DNA of 32,000 bases from Wallemia ichthyophaga EXF-994 (GCF_000400465.1 NW_008806289.1:120001-152000), one strand, 5' to 3'; positions 5,751 through 30,211 are shown, counted from the first letter of the stretch. Numbers and translations: made by a program. The notes: generated by a model not told the origin, from the sequence alone.

Positions 5751-6033
5751 AGTTTTTGAGCGAGCGAGAAGCTTAGAATTCTCGAAACGTCGACATATTT
5801 TGATAATGACATTTTAAATTTGGATTTGTTCTTATTAGAGGGATTTTGAGAGTGGCTGGATCTTATTTAATAGGACTGCTTAAATACCTCACCAGTCCCA
5901 GTACACTGCATATCGTCGCAGTATGTGTCATCTTAGACATGTTTGAATACAACAAGATGAATAAGATATTCTAAATCTGATCATCTTTCTGACTACATCT
6001 TTATAATTTCATTTCTAACTCTTCAAATCTCAT

Positions 6034-18664: not shown

Positions 18665-20161
18665 CTAGAATGGGAATCCACCGGCAGAAGTGAATCTGGT
18701 TCCACCACCACCGAAAGAGCTATAACCGCCACCCATTCCACCACCACCCATTCCACCACCAAACGCACCAGATGCGAATAAATCAGCCAAGTTTATATCT
18801 GCACCCATTCCACCACTGCTAAATCCACCACCCATGCCACCAACGCCTTCATCAAGATCAAGACCATTGTCATATATGTGTCTTTGTTGTGAATCTGTGA
18901 GTACGCTGTAAGATTCGTTGATCTGTTTGAAATATTCCTCGTCACCACCTTTATCTGGATGGTGAATGAGGGATTGTTTTCTAAATGCCTTTTTCAATTC
19001 AGGATCAGTTGCAGTCTTTTGTACTTGAAGTATTTTGTAGTGATCGACGCGTTTAGATTTTTTGAGTTCCTTTTCAGCGTTACGGACTTCCTTCTCCAAG
19101 CCCTGCTTTTCTTCCATGGTGCAGGTATCGAGAGCAGCTTTAAAGTCGGAGACGCACTCTTCAAACTTTTCTTGAGAGAGGTTTATACGAGCGCGTGTTC
19201 TGAGAGCTTTAGTGTAGTTTGGGTGTAGTTTGAGAGCGTGATCGACGTCAGTAAACGCTTCATCAGATTTATCGGATAATTTGCTGTAAGCAGTGGCGCG
19301 GTTGGATAACAAAACAGCCTTCACTTTACCTTCACCGATTTCGCCTTGATCGCTGCTGAGGGCGTCAAGGGCGGTGGAGTATTGTTGTATAGCTTCAGTA
19401 TAACGTGCGTGTTTGAAAGCCTCATTACCACTCTCCTTACCCCTTTCAACAACGCGTGTACGTTTAAGGAGTGATTTAGCGGGAGAAAAGTCAGGATCAG
19501 ATCTCATTGCAGCTTGCAAGTGAGCGATGGCTTTAGAAAAGTTGGAGTCGAGGAAGAGAACGCGTGCTCGGAGGTAAAGGAGGTCAGGGGAGGCGGGGGA
19601 CATGGAGAGAAGGTCGGACGCAATTCTACCAGCTTCGAGGAGGTCACCTTTGCCGATGAGACATTCAACTTTACCGGCCTTCCATTCGAGAGGGGAATCG
19701 AGGACGTTGCAGCCAGACTCACGCTCAGCCTGGCGCAGGGACATAGAAGCCATAGACCAGTTGTTGTTAGCGCGTTCTTTGTCGTAATTGTGGATGGCGT
19801 TGAGCGTGCGTTGGCATTGTTGGGTGAAGGATACAAGGGAGGGGTCACTCGAGGATTTGTAGTCGGTGAGAATGGCTAATGCCTTTGCTGGCTGGCCCAA
19901 GCTGAGGTAACAGCGTGCAAGTCTGAGCTGGATTTTCAAGGAAGAAGGGGTGGTTGACGTAGCCTCCTCAATGTCATTGATAGCCGATCTGAACTTCTTC
20001 TGAGCCATTAGAGCAGCAGCTCTGTTTGTAAGGAAGGCTTTGTTGGATGGGTTTGCTTGGATGGCGGTGGTGTACAGTGACACAGCCTGATCATAGTCAC
20101 CGCCTTTAAACGCAACATTCCCCTGCTCTTTGAGTTGCTCTGCGTGTGCGTCGTCGCCCAT
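18665..20161 (-). CDS. TPR-repeat DnaJ protein (DNAJC7/Tpr2-like)
   Basis: Multiple TPR repeats (AEQLKEQGNVAFK, KESGNEAFK, LLSNRATAY), a C-terminal J domain with HHPDKGG, and a G/M-rich tail. Confidence 0.92.
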   Translation of the reverse strand: MGDDAHAEQLKEQGNVAFKGGDYDQAVSLYTTAIQANPSNKAFLTNRAAALMAQKKFRSAINDIEEATSTTPSSLKIQLRLARCYLSLGQPAKALAILTDYKSSSDPSLVSFTQQCQRTLNAIHNYDKERANNNWSMASMSLRQAERESGCNVLDSPLEWKAGKVECLIGKGDLLEAGRIASDLLSMSPASPDLLYLRARVLFLDSNFSKAIAHLQAAMRSDPDFSPAKSLLKRTRVVERGKESGNEAFKHARYTEAIQQYSTALDALSSDQGEIGEGKVKAVLLSNRATAYSKLSDKSDEAFTDVDHALKLHPNYTKALRTRARINLSQEKFEECVSDFKAALDTCTMEEKQGLEKEVRNAEKELKKSKRVDHYKILQVQKTATDPELKKAFRKQSLIHHPDKGGDEEYFKQINESYSVLTDSQQRHIYDNGLDLDEGVGGMGGGFSSGGMGADINLADLFASGAFGGGMGGGGMGGGYSSFGGGGTRFTSAGGFPF

Positions 20162-25004: not shown

Positions 25005-26771
25005 TTACAAAAATTCTTTTGGTCTGCTTATTGGGTCTCCCGCTTGACTATCATATATTAATCCAGCCACCTTGAACGCCAACTCATCCGCTTGACCACG
25101 CGTTTGTGCTTCTGCGTAAACTCTCACACAATCTTCAGTACCTGAAGGTCTAACGAATGATCTACCATCCTGATACTTGCTTACATGACCATCTATCTCT
25201 TTCTGCAGATCAGCTGGCGTGACTAGCTTTCTTTCCGCATCGGTCGTCGTGAAAGCGGTTCTGTCTGGTACTGTAACCTTAACTAATCTGTTTGGGAAGT
25301 CTTCATACAGCCCATCCCATTCTGCTGGTCCCCATTGCTTTTGAATGAGAATTGCTTCAACCAGTAATAAATCTGATAATGCATCTCCAACAGTTTGGTT
25401 TGCAACTTCAGAAAGAGCAATCAATTGTTGTAAAGCAGTTTGTTGTGCTGGCATAACTGGCACTGTGTTCTTGATCAAATTTATAAATTCATCACTGAAA
25501 AGAACAGTCCCATGACCATTTGCTTCAAAGTAAACACCAACGCTATATTGTTGTGCTGCGTGATGAAGATGCTTAACACCAGTTGGTACACACTTAATTG
25601 GAACTTGTTGTGCGTTTATGAACTTTGAGCTACAACCATTAGCGTATGCTGTTTGAACAACACCAACATTTGCAGTATCAGACAAACCAGCTTTATCGAC
25701 GAGATCAATGATAAACACTGAAAGCAAGCTAGCAATTTTATCACCATCGAGTAATTTGAAGTTACCTCTTTGGTCGTTGTAATAGTAAACAATTCTATCA
25801 GCGTCACCATCGAGAGAAGCGCAGCGTTGATTAGGAGTAGGTGAGAAACCAACTGGTAATTGCTGCTTAGATTTTACGTGATCAGCGCCGCAACCGTTAT
25901 TAAGTTTACCAATTCCAGCAGTGGTATCGTCAAACACAGGCTCGAGTGTGAGTGGGGCATCGACTCTATTCAACCTAGAGTTAAGGTCATGGATATATGG
26001 AGCACCGATACCATTTGCACAGTCAACTTTTAAAGGAGCGATGCTAGGTTTACCTTGAACGAGGCCATTGAAAGCGTTGACCATCTTATCCATGTAACCG
26101 TTAATAGTGGGTTCACCGTACTCATCGTTAGTACCTTTGCTGTTGGTAGCGCGAACGAGGTAATGAAGTGCAGGAGTTGTAGCTAACCCGTAATCTTCTA
26201 CTTGCACGCTACCATTGTTCACAGCGTGAATGCCATCTTTGAGAGAAGCGAGGAGAGAATCACCGGAAGGACGCGTGTCTCTTGCGATAATGATGTTAGC
26301 CTTTTTAGACAGATCAATTTTGAGGGTATTTGCAAGTTGTGTGCAGTAGCTAGCGAAGCTGTCTAAAGGCGTGTTTGCGAGTGCAGTCGCGTAAGCTTCC
26401 CAGGAAGGATCAAGCATGTCACCATGTGGATCAACAAGCTTTACGCCGTTATCCTGTGTGTATTTTGAATCAGCTCAAGCTGAAAACTTGGTCAAGACAA
26501 CTAACAGATTCCGGGTTATGTGAAGCAGTGACCATAACGCCGACAGCTTTGCCGTCTAACTTTTGAGAGCGAAAAACGGCGATGATACCGACGCGGAATA
26601 ATACGGCGTCGAGTACAGTGGCTCTGGGAGTGAGGAATGTTAGTGCCAGCTAATGAGAGACATATAGACAAACTTGGTACGGAAGCCAGCAGTACCGTAT
26701 GCGTAGATGTGGTTAGCTGGTGGAGGATGTTGGTGTGCTAGCTTTGAGATATTTTCAGTAATCAATGACAT
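25005..26771 (-). CDS. PCM1: Phosphoacetylglucosamine mutase, 3 exons
   Basis: YGTAGFRT, catalytic GVMVTASHNPES|DNGVK, DGDADR, GVYFEANGHGT, RPSGTED. Introns at 26624-26673 and 26454-26505. Confidence 0.95.
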
Positions 26772-26833: not shown

Positions 26834-27170
26834 ATGTCGTCAGTAGAAGATTTACATGGTGAGTTGAGCGTATTAACTCCGTGGCTTCTAACTTAATATC
26901 TCCCTCAACAGCCCTGAAGGACGCCCAAGCTAATCACGTTCGTGAAAGCTGGGTTAGTGCAATGGAACTTAGATTAGTTAAAACAGAGCTTCAAAAGTGC
27001 CATCAATATGAAGGAGTTAACCACTACGCTACTTGTCAAGATTTGAGTAATCGTTATGTGGATATGCTTAGGGATCATAGAGTTGGTGGTTTTCTAATGG
27101 ATACAAGCACAAAATTGACAATTCATAGGTCAAGGGTTATAAGATTCAAGAGAAGGAAGTCGATTCTTAG
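26834..27170 (+). CDS. Complex I accessory subunit NDUFB10 (12 kDa), 3 exons
   Basis: HVRESWVSAMELRLVKTELQKCHQYEGVNHYATC. Introns 26859-26911 and 27082-27128 give the ending ...VKGYKIQEKEVDS*. Confidence 0.85.
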
Positions 27171-28045
27171 TGTTGTTGAGCAGATTCATACGATTTCATT
27201 ACTTGAATAGCCATACGTTCAGCTTGAGATTCTAGCATGCTTAGTTGGTGTAATGTATCTGTTGTTGCCTTTTTCAAATCCTCAACGCCCTCTTCACTAC
27301 TGAGATTGAATTCTGTCAATCCGATATCCACAATCTCGTCTTCACTATCGAATAGATGTTCACCCATAATCAAATTGGATATTTTACCATCTTTGACAAG
27401 GTTTAGACGGGTTTCAAGTATATTTAGACATTCTCTAGCCCTAATTAGCTCCTCTACTAGCTGTTCTAATCGATCTGCTGAGGGAATATGATTGATTACG
27501 TTTGTTGCAGGTAAGTTACGCGGTAGGAGTGTGTTGCTTGGGTGTATCGTGAATTTCAATTGTGACATTATCCAATCGCCCACGAGATCATTCTTGGTGT
27601 ACGATTTAAGCAATTCTAGATTATCAATTTCAATGGGTATATGCATTAATCTGTAGAGATGTATATCGCGTGGTTGAGTAGTATAAACCGTGTAAATGAA
27701 GAATAAGATAGCATTGATTGCATCATTATCGTTATTCTCAATAAAACCTGTAAACAGTTTGAATGAAATTCTGAAAATGGTTTGATAAAATGAACATCTT
27801 ATATGTGAATGTAGGTGTATAAAGTGAATATTTCTCCAACCAAGATGTGTATACGTTTTTATAAAACAATCAAAAGCGTTTTGAGTGCTGTTCGGGATAT
27901 TCAGGCTATTCGATTTGTACGTATCAACCAATCTTCTCAAGTCATCAAAGAGTGATGTAATGAATTGATTACTGTAAAAGTAAGATGGCTGTATATTATT
28001 TGCATATTTATTACCAGGCTCTGCTCTTCTCTTGATTACACTCAT
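27167..28045 (-). CDS. snRNA-activating complex subunit SNAPC1/SNAP43-like protein
   Basis: 292-aa intronless ORF. FDCFIKTYTHLGWRNIHF...AILFFIYTVYTTQP resembles the SNAP43 conserved block (F..F...W/Y..F..I; LY.LY.TQ). Recognised from memory and not searched. Confidence 0.62.
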   Translation of the reverse strand: MSVIKRRAEPGNKYANNIQPSYFYSNQFITSLFDDLRRLVDTYKSNSLNIPNSTQNAFDCFIKTYTHLGWRNIHFIHLHSHIRCSFYQTIFRISFKLFTGFIENNDNDAINAILFFIYTVYTTQPRDIHLYRLMHIPIEIDNLELLKSYTKNDLVGDWIMSQLKFTIHPSNTLLPRNLPATNVINHIPSADRLEQLVEELIRARECLNILETRLNLVKDGKISNLIMGEHLFDSEDEIVDIGLTEFNLSSEEGVEDLKKATTDTLHQLSMLESQAERMAIQVMKSYESAQQH

Positions 28046-28055
28046 TGTGGCTGCG

Positions 28056-29005
28056 ATGAAGTGAGTTTGAGTTTGGATTGAATTTACTTGAAATATTCAA
28101 CGAAACTGAAGTAAAGTTAAAGAAATTCAAGCTTTAGTGAGTTTTCTGGATTCTTTGGGTCCTTGGGTTCCCTGGGTTCTTTGAATAAACTTCTAACTCA
28201 CTTGGTATGGCTTAGAATGATAAGGAACTCCAGCTTAATCTTTCTTCTGCAAGTTGGCATGATCAATATAAGCGTGTGTAGAAGTTGATCGGAAATACTC
28301 AACTCAATTCACACCGCTCACAGACTCAGCCTATGTCTACGTCGGTGGTCTTTTCACTGGTCTAACAGAAGGAGACGTCATTACCATTCTATCTCAGTTG
28401 GTTGATTATCTAACCCCACGCACAAACACTCACACACACTCAGATTTGGTGAAGTCGCTGACATCAATATGCCCCGCGATAAGCAATCTGGTAATCCACG
28501 CGGTTTTGCTTTCGTCATGTACGAAGATCAGCGTAGTACTGTGCTAGCTGTGGATAACTTGAATGGGTCACAGGTGTTAGGACGCACCCTTCGCGTTGAC
28601 CACGTCGATAGATACTCACAGCCCAAAGTGCGCAACGAGGACGGCGAGCTTATCGATGCTGAGAGCGAGCAACTCAATGCGCGCTGGACTGAGCACGTTG
28701 GAGAGAGTAATGAGAGTAATGAGATTAATCAGGGTAAGGGTGGGTGTTTGTATGGCTGCTTGAATCTCCCCCCGCTAAACACACACCACATAGGTAAGAG
28801 ACATGAGGGAGATAGCGACAGTGAGTTGGAAAGCGAAGATCCTATGGCTGCGTATATACGCGCGCAGCAGAAGGCTGTCGGTGGTGTTTCCTCTACAGTT
28901 GACAAAAACAGAGAGAAAGAAGAGAGGAAAGCACGCAAAGCTCAACGTGCGGTTAAGCGAGCAGCGAGAGAAGCGTCTGAGAAAGAAAAACGACGTCGTT
29001 ATTAA
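28056..29005 (+). CDS. IST3: RES complex RRM subunit Ist3/Snu17/RBMX2, 5-6 exons
   Basis: Spliced MN|KVKEIQAL|NDKEL...SWHDQYK|.SAYVYVGGL..GLTEGDVITILSQ|FGE...GFAFVMYEDQRSTVLAVDNLNG. Introns at 28061-28111, 28137-28215, 28274-28323 and 28397-28443, and probably 28734-28793. Confidence 0.9.
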
Positions 29006-29017
29006 AATTACATCACT

Positions 29018-29566
29018 TCACCTCCTCATCATCGCTTGTACCAAATTAGCTCTATTGATAGCCCCACTCTTGTGAATCTCCTCCTTCCTCTTAAGAACAT
29101 CAGATTGTTGTTCAAGTATAGCGAGAACCTCTCTCGCCAGTCTATGATGCAGGAACTTTTCATTACGTTTATCAGAAGCCTTCATTAGGGCATGGAAACC
29201 AAGTCTAATCCTCTGACGTTCGTTAAGTGCCAGTGGAGTATGTAGAACTTTATTGTTACGCTTGCTACTGCTTAGACGGAAAGAAGGTGCAGCCATAGCG
29301 ATAGCGTTTCTGAGTAAGGAAACGGGTTCAGTGGAGTTTGCAGTGAGAGAGCGCATTTCAGTGAGGGTTTTATTAAGGTGACTCTCGGCTCTAGCTTTCT
29401 TTCCATCGCGCATAATTAGATTACTGAGATAACCCAATAACGGTTCACTTGAAGGTGGAATTTGTGTGGGTGTACTGCGAAATCCATTCACAGCGACCGA
29501 TAAAGATGAAAACTGCTCAAAATGAGTCTGTGCCGTGCGGGAAGATGTTTGTAAAAATCTCTTCAT
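29018..29566 (-). CDS. RSM7: Mitochondrial ribosomal protein uS7m
   Basis: LSNLIMRDGKKARA...AIAMAAP...PLALNERQRIRLG...LAREVL...KRKEEIHK.GAINRAN. Confidence 0.9.
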   Translation of the reverse strand: MKRFLQTSSRTAQTHFEQFSSLSVAVNGFRSTPTQIPPSSEPLLGYLSNLIMRDGKKARAESHLNKTLTEMRSLTANSTEPVSLLRNAIAMAAPSFRLSSSKRNNKVLHTPLALNERQRIRLGFHALMKASDKRNEKFLHHRLAREVLAILEQQSDVLKRKEEIHKSGAINRANLVQAMMRR

Positions 29567-29631
29567 CGCCGTGTGCTGGGAAGGTGAGTGTACCCACTTT
29601 GAGATAAAACAATCAAGTTGAAATAATAAAA

Positions 29632-30211
29632 ATGGTGAGATTTGTTTATATTTTTATTCAGATTTATTAAATGAGTTTTATAGTCAGACGCTGGTAGGTA
29701 CACGCACATACTCACACATACCCGCACCAACACACCTCCCGCAGAAGCTAAAGAAGCATTCGCCTTATTCGATAAACGCGGCACTGGGAAGATTCCTTCG
29801 GGTCAACTCGGTGACCTCCTTAGAGCTCTCGGCCAGAATCCAACACAAGCAGAAGTTGACTCTTTACGCTCTTCAGCACCTTCTGAGCGTGAGTTTTAAC
29901 CTTTTCTTGGTTTTGTTACGCGTCTAACGCGTATAATTATCTCAGTCGACTACAAGACATTCCTCTCCATCCTCCAACGCCCTGATGGCTTCAAACCTGC
30001 AGGTGAACTTGACGATTTCGTTAGAGGTTTCCAAGTTTTCGATAAAGATGGCTCTGGCGTCATCGGCGCAGGTGAATTGAGATACGTACTCACTCAACTT
30101 GGTGAGAAAATGTCTGACGCTGAGGTCGATGAGTTGTTGAAAGGCGTGCCAATTTCTTCAGATGGAAACATCAATTACCGCGACTTTGCCGCTCACATTT
30201 TAGGTGCTTAG
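29632..30211 (+). CDS. MLC1: Myosin light chain (Cdc4/Mlc1-type EF-hand protein), 4 exons; missed by the ORF track
   Basis: M|SDA|[18 protein letters not shown]...[17 protein letters not shown]...|...[40 protein letters not shown]. Introns at 29635-29683, 29694-29744 and 29889-29945. Confidence 0.92.

What the first reader, a model, noticed from the sequence alone, without database searches (positions are those of the whole stretch)
28043..28060. Head-to-head genes with start codons only 10 nt apart (SNAPC1-like / IST3)
Seen: CAT-tgtggctgcg-ATG. The minus-strand ORF has no other Met for ~130 codons. The plus-strand ATG is needed to build the conserved spliced N-terminus MNKVKEIQALNDKEL of Ist3/RBMX2. 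Inference: unless both 5' UTRs are under ~5 nt, the transcripts overlap sense-antisense. Each promoter would then lie inside the partner's CDS or first intron, implying transcriptional interference or coupling. Both products act in spliceosome biology (snRNA transcription and the RES complex), so this could be a co-regulated snRNP module.
Basis: partly seen in the sequence, partly recalled or inferred. Interest (0 to 1): 0.7.

Follow-up and report, generated by a model that had tools for sequence, protein, structure and literature searches.

The report
Two fungal genes starting 10 bases apart
In the very compact genome of the salt-loving fungus Wallemia ichthyophaga, a splicing-factor gene (Ist3/Cwf29/RBMX2) and a divergent SNAPC1-like gene really do begin 10 bases apart on opposite strands. 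This looks like ordinary genome squeezing seen all along this stretch of DNA, not a dedicated regulatory module.

Summary
The window is Wallemia ichthyophaga EXF-994, KE007239.1:120001-152000. CAT at 28043-28045 starts a 292-aa minus-strand ORF. ATG at 28056-28058 starts a 5-nt coding microexon (ATGAA|GTGAGT) of the Ist3/Cwf29/RBMX2 orthologue. Homology supports both starts, and one NCBI annotation of another strain uses the same two start codons.

The head-to-head pair and the microexon are kept in four Wallemia species, with spacers of 10, 26, 45 and 45 nt. The minus-strand protein is a divergent basidiomycete SNAPC1 (SNAP43) relative. That assignment holds only at profile level, because its own Pfam hit is below threshold.

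The pairing is absent in Coprinopsis, Tremella and Tilletia. Four other divergent pairs in the same window have ATG-ATG gaps of 62-75 nt. The same SNAPC1-like gene overlaps an unannotated NDUFB10-like gene at its stop codon, and Ist3 ends 12 nt from the mitochondrial S7 gene.

The 10-nt gap is therefore the extreme of a genome-wide compaction pattern. Crossing 5' transcript ends, with each core promoter inside the partner gene, is the most likely arrangement. It is inferred only, because no transcript data were reachable. A dedicated "snRNP co-regulation module" is not supported.

The parts
27167..28045 (-). SNAPC1(SNAP43)-like gene, single-exon CDS of 292 aa; start codon is CAT 28043-28045 on the + strand
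   Evidence: ORF. The N-terminus (AEP..K..N.IQPSYFYS) is conserved in four Wallemia species. A profile search found 69 relatives, and 36 of 38 aligned members hit Pfam SNAPC1. The family profile's best PDB hit is human SNAPC1, 7xur_C, E=0.0047. The protein's own Pfam hit is below threshold.
28046..28055 (.). 10-nt spacer tgtggctgcg between the two start codons; it gives a purine at -3 for both ATGs (gcgATGA and acaATGA)
   Evidence: The homologous spacers are 26 nt (W. mellicola) and 45 nt (W. hederae and a Wallemia sp.). The alignment shows a deletion of about 35 nt in W. ichthyophaga.
28056..28060 (+). Ist3/Cwf29/RBMX2 exon 1, coding part: ATGAA, followed by a GTGAGT donor
   Evidence: ATGAA|GTRAGT is conserved in all four Wallemia species.
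28061..28111 (+). Ist3 intron 1 (51 nt); candidate site of the SNAPC1-like core promoter or 5' leader
   Evidence: Splice model. The promoter role is inferred only.
28112..28136 (+). Ist3 exon 2 (25 nt), completing MNKVKEIQAL
28137..28215 (+). Ist3 intron 2 (79 nt, CTAAC branch site)
28216..28273 (+). Ist3 exon 3 (NDKELQLNLSSASWHDQYK)
   Evidence: It matches the NCBI partial protein P0004.
28324..28396 (+). Ist3 exon 4 (start of the RRM)
28444..28733 (+). Ist3 exon 5 (rest of the RRM). The donor is either 28734 (my 220-aa model) or 28740 (NCBI 222-aa model)
28794..29005 (+). Ist3 exon 6 and stop codon
26834..27170 (+). Neighbour: unannotated NDUFB10-like gene (exons 26834-26858, 26912-27081, 27129-27170). 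Its stop codon overlaps the stop codon of the SNAPC1-like gene
29018..29566 (-). Neighbour: mitochondrial ribosomal protein S7. Its stop lies 12 nt from the Ist3 stop

Best explanation
Two genuine, unrelated housekeeping genes have been pushed together by genome compaction in the Wallemia lineage until their start codons almost touch. One is the RES-complex splicing factor Ist3/Cwf29/RBMX2. The other is a divergent SNAPC1-like protein.

A 10-nt spacer cannot hold two 5' UTRs and two core promoters. Ist3's first coding exon is only 5 nt. The two transcription units therefore most likely cross. Ist3 transcription would start inside the first codons of the SNAPC1-like gene, within about 68 nt of the Ist3 ATG, which is downstream of the nearest upstream ATG. 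SNAPC1-like transcription would start inside Ist3 exon 1, intron 1 or intron 2. Each core promoter would then be embedded in the partner gene, and the mRNAs would be complementary over some tens of nucleotides at their 5' ends. The arrangement is probably tolerated because both genes fire rarely, rather than selected for coupling.

Shown: gene identities, start codons, splice model, spacer lengths in four species, lack of pairing outside Wallemia, and similar crowding of neighbouring genes.

Inferred: TSS positions, transcript overlap, and absence of a regulatory role.
For: Geometry and start codons. An independent NCBI model has the same starts.

The Ist3 N-terminus is conserved across Basidiomycota, and the RRM scores E=4.7e-17.

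The SNAPC1-like N-terminal 133 aa are conserved in Wallemia and align to the SNAPC1 domain of relatives from their residue ~12-17 onwards. The consensus Met sits 16-17 residues before the QP.YF motif, as it does here.

The pair and microexon are conserved with spacers of 10, 26, 45 and 45 nt.

Compaction is general. CDS makes up 73.6% of a 9.6-Mb genome (PMC3849046). Other head-to-head gaps in the window are 62-75 nt. The SNAPC1-like stop overlaps the NDUFB10-like stop. The Ist3 and S7 stops are 12 nt apart.

Pairing is absent in Coprinopsis (eIF3-zeta neighbour), Tremella and Tilletia (ELP1 neighbour).

There is no upstream ATG for 68 nt before the Ist3 ATG or for 212 nt before the SNAPC1-like ATG in W. 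ichthyophaga. This is compatible with extended leaders.
Against: No TSS or transcript data were available.

The uATG-free runs are not statistically remarkable against a realistic null, the antisense strand of CDSs in the same window: 33% of positions reach 68 nt and 4% reach 212 nt.

In the other three species a palindromic CATG at the Ist3 start would put a short uORF into any SNAPC1-like leader that crosses it. This hints that their SNAPC1-like leaders may be short (44 nt or less) and lie inside the spacer.

Very short 5' UTRs are documented in another compact fungal-lineage genome, Encephalitozoon (PMC3629993).
Confidence: 0.68

Rival explanations
1. The transcripts do not overlap and have ultra-short leaders. 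Both TSSs lie within or at the edges of the 10-nt spacer, giving near-leaderless mRNAs (5' UTRs of 0-10 nt). A single tiny shared initiation region would be used in either direction, as in microsporidia, whose 5' UTRs are among the shortest known.
For: Head-to-head gaps of 62-75 nt are the rule in this window, so Wallemia leaders must often be short. In the three sister species the CATG palindrome at the Ist3 ATG would create a uATG in any SNAPC1-like leader longer than 25-44 nt. [quoted passage not shown] Both ATGs keep a purine at -3 inside the spacer.
Against: Ist3's first exon would be 15 nt or shorter in total, with the 5' splice site within about 15 nt of the cap. From general knowledge of scanning initiation, leaders of about 5 nt or less are poorly recognised. 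Two pre-initiation complexes cannot sit on the same ~10 bp, so the promoters would still lie inside the partner genes. W. ichthyophaga specifically lacks the CATG palindrome (GCGATGAA rather than GTCATGAA) and has 212 nt free of minus-strand ATGs.
Confidence: 0.17
2. This is a selected sense-antisense or bidirectional regulatory module. The 5' overlap or shared promoter couples, or mutually excludes, expression of a snRNA-transcription factor and a RES splicing factor, so that snRNP supply and splicing are co-ordinated.
For: Both products belong to spliceosome-related pathways by homology. The head-to-head pair and tiny spacer persist in four Wallemia species whose SNAPC1-like proteins are only ~40-60% identical.
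Against: The pairing is absent in Coprinopsis, Tremella and Tilletia. Within Wallemia the whole neighbourhood is syntenic (PhoD, EF-hand, S7, Ist3, SNAPC1-like, AGM1, WD40), so conservation of the pair is not special. Unrelated gene pairs nearby are similarly tight. No conserved non-coding motif appears in the spacer or introns beyond the splice signals.
Confidence: 0.1
3. One of the gene models is wrong, as in the older EXF-994 annotation. The SNAPC1-like protein would start at Met134 (the 159/173-aa models), or Ist3 would use another 5' exon, so the true starts would be far apart.
For: The GeneMark-ES annotation of EXF-994 models a 159-aa protein and a 191-aa RRM protein with an exon inside the 292-aa ORF. 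NCBI also holds a 173-aa model (P0003).
Against: Residues 1-133 are conserved among four species and carry the part homologous to the SNAPC1 domain. The Ist3 N-terminus MN.VKEI..LN.KEL can be built only from the ATGAA microexon, which is conserved in all four species. There is no other in-frame Met before the RRM.
Confidence: 0.05

Closest known systems
Overlapping or abutting transcription units in compacted eukaryotic genomes (microsporidia such as Encephalitozoon cuniculi and Antonospora locustae; nucleomorphs)
   Same: Intergenic DNA is reduced to almost nothing. Transcripts initiate in, or terminate in, neighbouring genes. 5' UTRs are very short (PMC3629993, which cites Williams et al. 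2005, PMC1182411).
   Different: Wallemia is a free-living, culturable, intron-rich basidiomycete with 2.4 introns per gene (PMC3849046). Here the 5' splice site of a microexon sits 15 nt from the neighbour's start codon. No transcript mapping exists for it.
Bidirectional (head-to-head) gene pairs of yeast, plants and mammals
   Same: Divergent orientation, a shared upstream region, and possible co-expression or interference.
   Different: Classical bidirectional promoters have outward-pointing TSSs at the edges of a nucleosome-depleted region roughly 100-200 bp wide (general knowledge). With 10 nt between the ATGs that geometry is impossible. The TSSs must either cross or nearly coincide.
Ist3/Snu17 (S. 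cerevisiae), Cwf29 (S. pombe), RBMX2 (human): the RRM subunit of the RES complex
   Same: A single RRM, a conserved N-terminal MN..KEI..LN..EL and SWH..YK lead-in, and 50-60% identity to basidiomycete proteins named Cwf29/RBMX2.
   Different: Nothing notable in the protein. Only the gene structure (5-nt and 25-nt first coding exons) and the neighbourhood are unusual.
SNAPC1/SNAP43, subunit 1 of the snRNA-activating protein complex (human structures 7XUR, 7ZWC)
   Same: An N-terminal helical domain of ~150 aa that aligns at profile level. Relatives hit Pfam PF09808.
   Different: The protein is very divergent: its own Pfam score is 15.5 bits against a threshold of 23.8. The C-terminal half is unrelated. 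The existence of a SNAPc complex in Wallemia was not tested.

Membership tests
Ist3/Snu17/Cwf29/RBMX2 (RES complex RRM subunit) | A single canonical RRM near the N-terminus | tested here: met
   Pfam RRM_1 E=4.7e-17 over residues 34-104 of the spliced 220-aa product.
Ist3/Snu17/Cwf29/RBMX2 (RES complex RRM subunit) | Conserved N-terminal extension (MN.[VI][KR]EI..[IL]N..EL ... SWH.[EQ]YK) before the RRM | tested here: met
   The spliced N-terminus MNKVKEIQALNDKELQLNLSSASWHDQYK matches P0008, P0011, P0016, P0070, P0091, P0098 and P0119.
Ist3/Snu17/Cwf29/RBMX2 (RES complex RRM subunit) | Closest relatives are the family's named members | tested here: met
   1552 hits at E<=1e-20. Basidiomycete hits are named 'RNA-binding protein Cwf29' or 'RNA-binding motif protein, X-linked 2' at 50-60% identity.
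Ist3/Snu17/Cwf29/RBMX2 (RES complex RRM subunit) | Binds Bud13 and Pml1 to form RES | not testable with these tools
   Needs biochemistry.
SNAPC1/SNAP43 (Pfam PF09808) | The protein itself scores above the Pfam gathering threshold | tested here: not met
   15.5 bits, E=0.019, against a threshold of 23.8. No hit at E<=0.01.
SNAPC1/SNAP43 (Pfam PF09808) | Homologous family members match the SNAPC1 model (transitive homology) | tested here: met
   The profile search found 69 relatives. 36 of 38 aligned members hit PF09808, best E=1.1e-12. The named relatives are basidiomycete hypothetical proteins.
SNAPC1/SNAP43 (Pfam PF09808) | The family profile recognises a solved SNAPC1 | tested here: inconclusive
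   The top PDB hit is human SNAPC1, 7xur_C, E=0.0047 over profile positions 30-185. The full-length chain 7zwc_a scores only E=0.42.
SNAPC1/SNAP43 (Pfam PF09808) | Fold similarity to SNAPC1 | tested here: inconclusive
   The AlphaFold model from a 2-sequence alignment has pLDDT 53.9. Foldseek found no match at E<=0.001.
SNAPC1/SNAP43 (Pfam PF09808) | Partner subunits (SNAPC3, SNAPC4) and PSE-type snRNA promoters present in the genome | not tested
   These lie outside the window. No snRNA gene is in the window (Rfam).
Head-to-head overlapping (5' sense-antisense) gene pair | Divergent genes whose start codons are too close for separate leaders | tested here: met
   The spacer is 10 nt.
Head-to-head overlapping (5' sense-antisense) gene pair | Mapped TSSs showing that the transcripts overlap | not testable with these tools
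The metagenome scan for the spliced junction found nothing.
Functionally coupled bidirectional pair | Pairing conserved beyond background synteny | tested here: not met
   The divergent neighbour of Ist3 is eIF3-zeta in Coprinopsis, an unrelated 273-aa protein in Tremella and ELP1 in Tilletia. tblastn found no SNAPC1-like sequence in those loci.

The most novel reading that the evidence does not exclude
Wallemia may use crossing, face-to-face promoters embedded in neighbouring coding sequence and introns, or near-leaderless mRNAs, as a genome-wide rule. That would make it a free-living, culturable, intron-rich model for the extreme transcription-unit compaction otherwise known from parasites and nucleomorphs. 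In the W. ichthyophaga lineage, a further ~35-nt deletion plus loss of the CATG palindrome at the Ist3 start would have forced the SNAPC1-like leader to run antisense through Ist3's start codon and first intron. The result would be an obligate 5' sense-antisense pair that influences splicing or translation of Ist3.
Probability: 0.15. Interest if true: 0.55.

Novelty: new member of a known kind. Interest (0 to 1): 0.27.

Why it matters
The finding mainly helps annotation. The type-strain annotation mis-models both genes because gene finders avoid such tight packing: it truncates the SNAPC1-like gene and invents an Ist3 exon. A conserved NDUFB10-like gene next door is missing from all annotations inspected.

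Biologically, it shows how far a free-living, intron-rich fungus can compress its transcription units. At this locus the gaps are 10 nt head-to-head, 12 nt tail-to-tail, and one pair of overlapping stop codons. If the predicted 5' crossing is confirmed, Wallemia would be a convenient system for studying promoters embedded in coding sequence and polymerase collision at housekeeping genes. It does not, on present evidence, reveal a new regulatory mechanism.

Tried and rejected
1. An exact-product look-up of the 292-aa ORF found nothing on record, because public models differ (261, 173 and 159 aa).

I did not pursue it another way.

3. One metagenome scan used a degenerate pattern spanning the spliced exon 1-2-3 junction and gave 0 hits.

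4. Structure prediction from a 2-sequence alignment gave pLDDT 54. Its Foldseek matches were meaningless.

5. Upstream-ATG depletion was tested as a proxy for leader extent. It looked suggestive against dinucleotide shuffles. It was unremarkable against the antisense strand of real CDSs in the window, so I do not rely on it.

6. The alignment of the four species' spacers and introns showed no conserved non-coding promoter motif beyond the splice signals and the TTGTCATGAAGTRAGT context.

7. Rfam found no RNA gene in the window.

8. Literature searches found nothing on Wallemia bidirectional promoters or UTRs.

9. I tried to resolve the first exon of the EF-hand gene beside S7 and did not succeed.

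Full report
**Source of the window.** The 498-aa ORF at 18665-20161 is encoded identically on Wallemia ichthyophaga EXF-994 scaffold KE007239.1 (GCA_000400465.1). The coordinates show that the window is KE007239.1:120001-152000. W. ichthyophaga is an extremely halophilic basidiomycete. Its genome is 9.6 Mb, 73.6% CDS, with 4884 genes and introns averaging 61 bp (PMC3849046). Those figures leave roughly 370 nt per gene for everything between coding sequences.

**Checking the observation.** The plus strand reads ...acactCATtgtggctgcgATGAAgtgagt....
- CAT is at 28043-28045, the spacer at 28046-28055, ATG at 28056-28058 and a GTGAGT donor at 28061.
- The minus-strand ORF 27167..28045 is 292 aa.
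- An in-frame stop lies 17 codons upstream with no ATG in between.
- The next Met is residue 134.

I built the plus-strand gene from canonical GT..AG introns of 47-79 nt. The exons are 28056-60, 28112-136, 28216-273, 28324-396, 28444-733 and 28794-29005. The product is 220 aa and begins MNKVKEIQALNDKELQLNLSSASWHDQYKHSAYVYVGGL.

**The plus-strand gene is Ist3.** The spliced protein has a full RRM, Pfam RRM_1 E=4.7e-17. It has 1552 homologues at E<=1e-20. The basidiomycete homologues are 50-60% identical and are named Cwf29 or RBMX2. They all start MN[VKT][VI][KR]EI..IN..EL. This shows that the 5-nt exon ATGAA supplies the true start. There is no other in-frame Met before the RRM. One public W. 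ichthyophaga model (P0004) is 'partial' and starts at NDKEL, which means the annotators missed the two microexons.

**The minus-strand gene is SNAPC1-like.**
- On its own the protein misses the Pfam SNAPC1 threshold: 15.5 bits against 23.8.
- A two-species profile searched against 1.84 billion representative proteins found 69 relatives. Their alignments begin at query residue ~20 and subject residue ~12-17.
- Of 38 aligned members, 36 hit PF09808, best E=1.1e-12.
- The family profile's best hit in the PDB is human SNAPC1, 7xur_C, E=0.0047.
- The named relatives are basidiomycete hypothetical proteins.
- The family consensus places its Met 16-17 residues before the conserved QP.YF motif, exactly as in the window protein.
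- Residues 1-133 are conserved among Wallemia species.

The start at 28045 is therefore real. The shorter public models (261 aa with a false in-frame 'intron', 173 aa and 159 aa) are artefacts. I file the protein as 'SNAPC1-like, profile-level evidence'. A structure-based test failed for lack of a confident model.

**Independent confirmation of the geometry.** The NCBI annotation of another strain (GCA_004918065.1) has the RRM gene ending at L002 5990 and the neighbour starting at 6001. These are the same two start codons, 10 nt apart, and the DNA is identical.

**Comparison across species.** I recovered the locus from W. mellicola, W. hederae and an unnamed Wallemia assembled from SRR25399871.
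- All three keep the head-to-head pair and the ATGAA|GTRAGT microexon.
- The spacers are 26, 45 and 45 nt.
- The alignment shows that W. ichthyophaga lost about 35 nt, including roughly three N-terminal codons of the SNAPC1-like gene.
- The whole neighbourhood is syntenic in these species: PhoD, EF-hand, mitochondrial S7, Ist3, SNAPC1-like, AGM1, WD40. The pair is therefore no more conserved than its surroundings.
- Outside Wallemia the pairing is gone. Ist3's divergent neighbour is eIF3-zeta in Coprinopsis cinerea (123 nt away), an unrelated 273-aa protein in Tremella mesenterica (640 nt) and ELP1 in Tilletia horrida (214 nt). tblastn with 38 family members found no SNAPC1-like sequence in those loci.

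**How unusual 10 nt is here.** It is less unusual than it first seems. Other divergent pairs in the same window have these ATG-ATG gaps:

| Pair | Window positions | Gap |
|---|---|---|
| NIF phosphatase / WD40 | 9772 / 9836 | 63 nt |
| D-Tyr-tRNA deacylase / 176-aa protein | 17105 / 17169 | 63 nt |
| DnaJ-TPR / WD40 | 20161 / 20237 | 75 nt |
| AGM1 / NDUFB10-like | 26771 / 26834 | 62 nt |

The 3' ends are just as tight. The SNAPC1-like stop codon (27167-27169) overlaps the stop (27168-27170) of a conserved, unannotated NDUFB10-like gene. The Ist3 stop (29003-29005) lies 12 nt from the stop of mitochondrial ribosomal protein S7 (29018-29020). The SNAPC1-like gene thus has essentially no private flanking DNA on either side. 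The 10-nt gap is the extreme of a local, and probably genome-wide, continuum.

**Mechanism.** To contain their start codons, the Ist3 mRNA must begin to the left of 28056 and the SNAPC1-like mRNA to the right of 28045. Either both TSSs fall within 10 nt, so the leaders sum to 10 nt or less, or the transcripts cross. I favour crossing, at about 0.7, for four reasons.
- With a TSS in the spacer, Ist3's first exon would be 15 nt or shorter, and its 5' splice site would sit almost at the cap.
- From general knowledge, scanning ribosomes recognise an AUG within a few nucleotides of the cap poorly.
- Two pre-initiation complexes cannot occupy the same 10 bp, so the core promoters must lie in the partner gene in either case.
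- W. ichthyophaga alone has replaced the GTCATGAA context of its three relatives with GCGATGAA. In the relatives the palindromic CATG puts an ATG on the minus strand. The replacement leaves 212 nt upstream of the SNAPC1-like ATG free of ATGs.

On the Ist3 side the nearest upstream ATG is 68 nt away. This would cap the leader at about 68 nt if uATGs are avoided.

These uATG arguments are weak. On the antisense strand of real CDSs in the window, 33% of positions have 68 nt or more of ATG-free sequence upstream, and 4% have 212 nt or more. The ultra-short-leader rival (about 0.17) is a live alternative. Typical gaps of 62-75 nt show that Wallemia leaders must often be short, and microsporidia provide a precedent (PMC3629993).

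**The co-regulation idea.** Both products are plausibly spliceosome-related. However, the pairing is absent from other basidiomycetes, functionally unrelated genes nearby are packed equally tightly, and no conserved non-coding motif appears in the spacer or introns. Adjacency by chance, fixed by compaction, is therefore the economical reading. I give dedicated coupling about 0.1.

**What could not be done.** No transcript-level data were reachable.
I did not try to get round this.
- One metagenome scan for the spliced junction found nothing.
- The published RNA-seq paper reports no UTR or antisense analysis.

Re-mapping that RNA-seq, or mapping 5' ends, would settle the question.

**Verdict.** The transcript-overlap inference is reasonable but unproven. 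The 'snRNP module' interpretation is not supported. This is a striking local example of a known phenomenon, namely gene crowding with embedded promoters and overlapping UTRs in a compacted eukaryotic genome. It is already implicit in one public annotation. Interest is modest.

Noticed in passing
window 26834-27170 (+): exons 26834-26858, 26912-27081, 27129-27170: A conserved small gene is absent from every public annotation I inspected (no gene is called here in L002, L004 or L010). It encodes a 78-aa NDUFB10 (complex I PDSW)-like protein. Pfam PF10249 gives E=4e-4, 21.3 bits, just under the 22.2 threshold. It is 72-98% identical in three other Wallemia species, including the last exon. Its stop codon overlaps the stop codon of the convergent SNAPC1-like gene. 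Its ATG is 62 nt from the AGM1 ATG (CAT 26769-26771).
   Followed up: partly
window 29018-29566 (-): The mitochondrial ribosomal protein S7 is annotated as 112 or 131 aa in public records. The full 182-aa ORF has an N-terminus (M.RF..T..R..Q.HFEQ) conserved in four species, so the true start is probably 29566. Its stop lies 12 nt from the Ist3 stop, so the 3' UTRs must overlap the partner's CDS.
   Followed up: partly
window 29506-30211 (+): One NCBI model places the ATG of the EF-hand (myosin light chain / Cdc4-like) gene at 29506. That would overlap the S7 CDS head-to-head by 61 nt. I could not build a convincing first exon, so this overlap is unresolved.
   Followed up: partly
window 27790-28956 and 27167-27646 (L010 1206-2372, 2516-2995): The type-strain (EXF-994, GeneMark-ES) annotation mis-models the locus. 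It has a 191-aa RRM protein with an exon placed inside the SNAPC1-like ORF, a SNAPC1-like protein truncated to 159 aa, and AGM1 fused into an 853-aa product.
   Followed up: yes
window 27742-27834 approx. (residues 70-100 of the 292-aa ORF): NCBI model P0001 (261 aa) removes an in-frame 93-nt 'intron' encoding WRNIHFIHLHSHIRCSFYQTIFRISFKLFTG. This segment is conserved in the other Wallemia protein P0002, so it is coding and the intron is spurious.
   Followed up: yes
window 28734-28793: Ist3 intron 5 is 60 nt long and in frame with no stop, so retaining it would give a 240-aa protein. The donor is ambiguous (28734 GTAAGG or 28740 GTGGGT), giving 220-aa or 222-aa products. Intron retention is reported as the main alternative-splicing mode in this fungus (PMC3849046).
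   Followed up: no
window 28155-28179 (Ist3 intron 2): There is a triple imperfect repeat, TTGGGTCC / TTGGGTTCC / CTGGGTTC, about 100-135 nt upstream of the SNAPC1-like ATG on the other strand. It is not conserved in the other Wallemia species. It could be a lineage-specific factor site or simply slippage.
   Followed up: no
window 9772/9836, 17105/17169, 20161/20237: Three further head-to-head gene pairs have only 63, 63 and 75 nt between their start codons: NIF phosphatase/WD40, D-Tyr-tRNA deacylase/176-aa protein, and DnaJ-TPR/WD40. D-Tyr-tRNA deacylase also ends 30 nt from the convergent mitochondrial S6 gene.
   Followed up: partly
window 28397 and 27082: The unusual 5' splice site GTTGGT is used twice within 1.4 kb, in Ist3 intron 4 and in the predicted NDUFB10-like intron 2. 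Exon conservation in sister species supports both.
   Followed up: no
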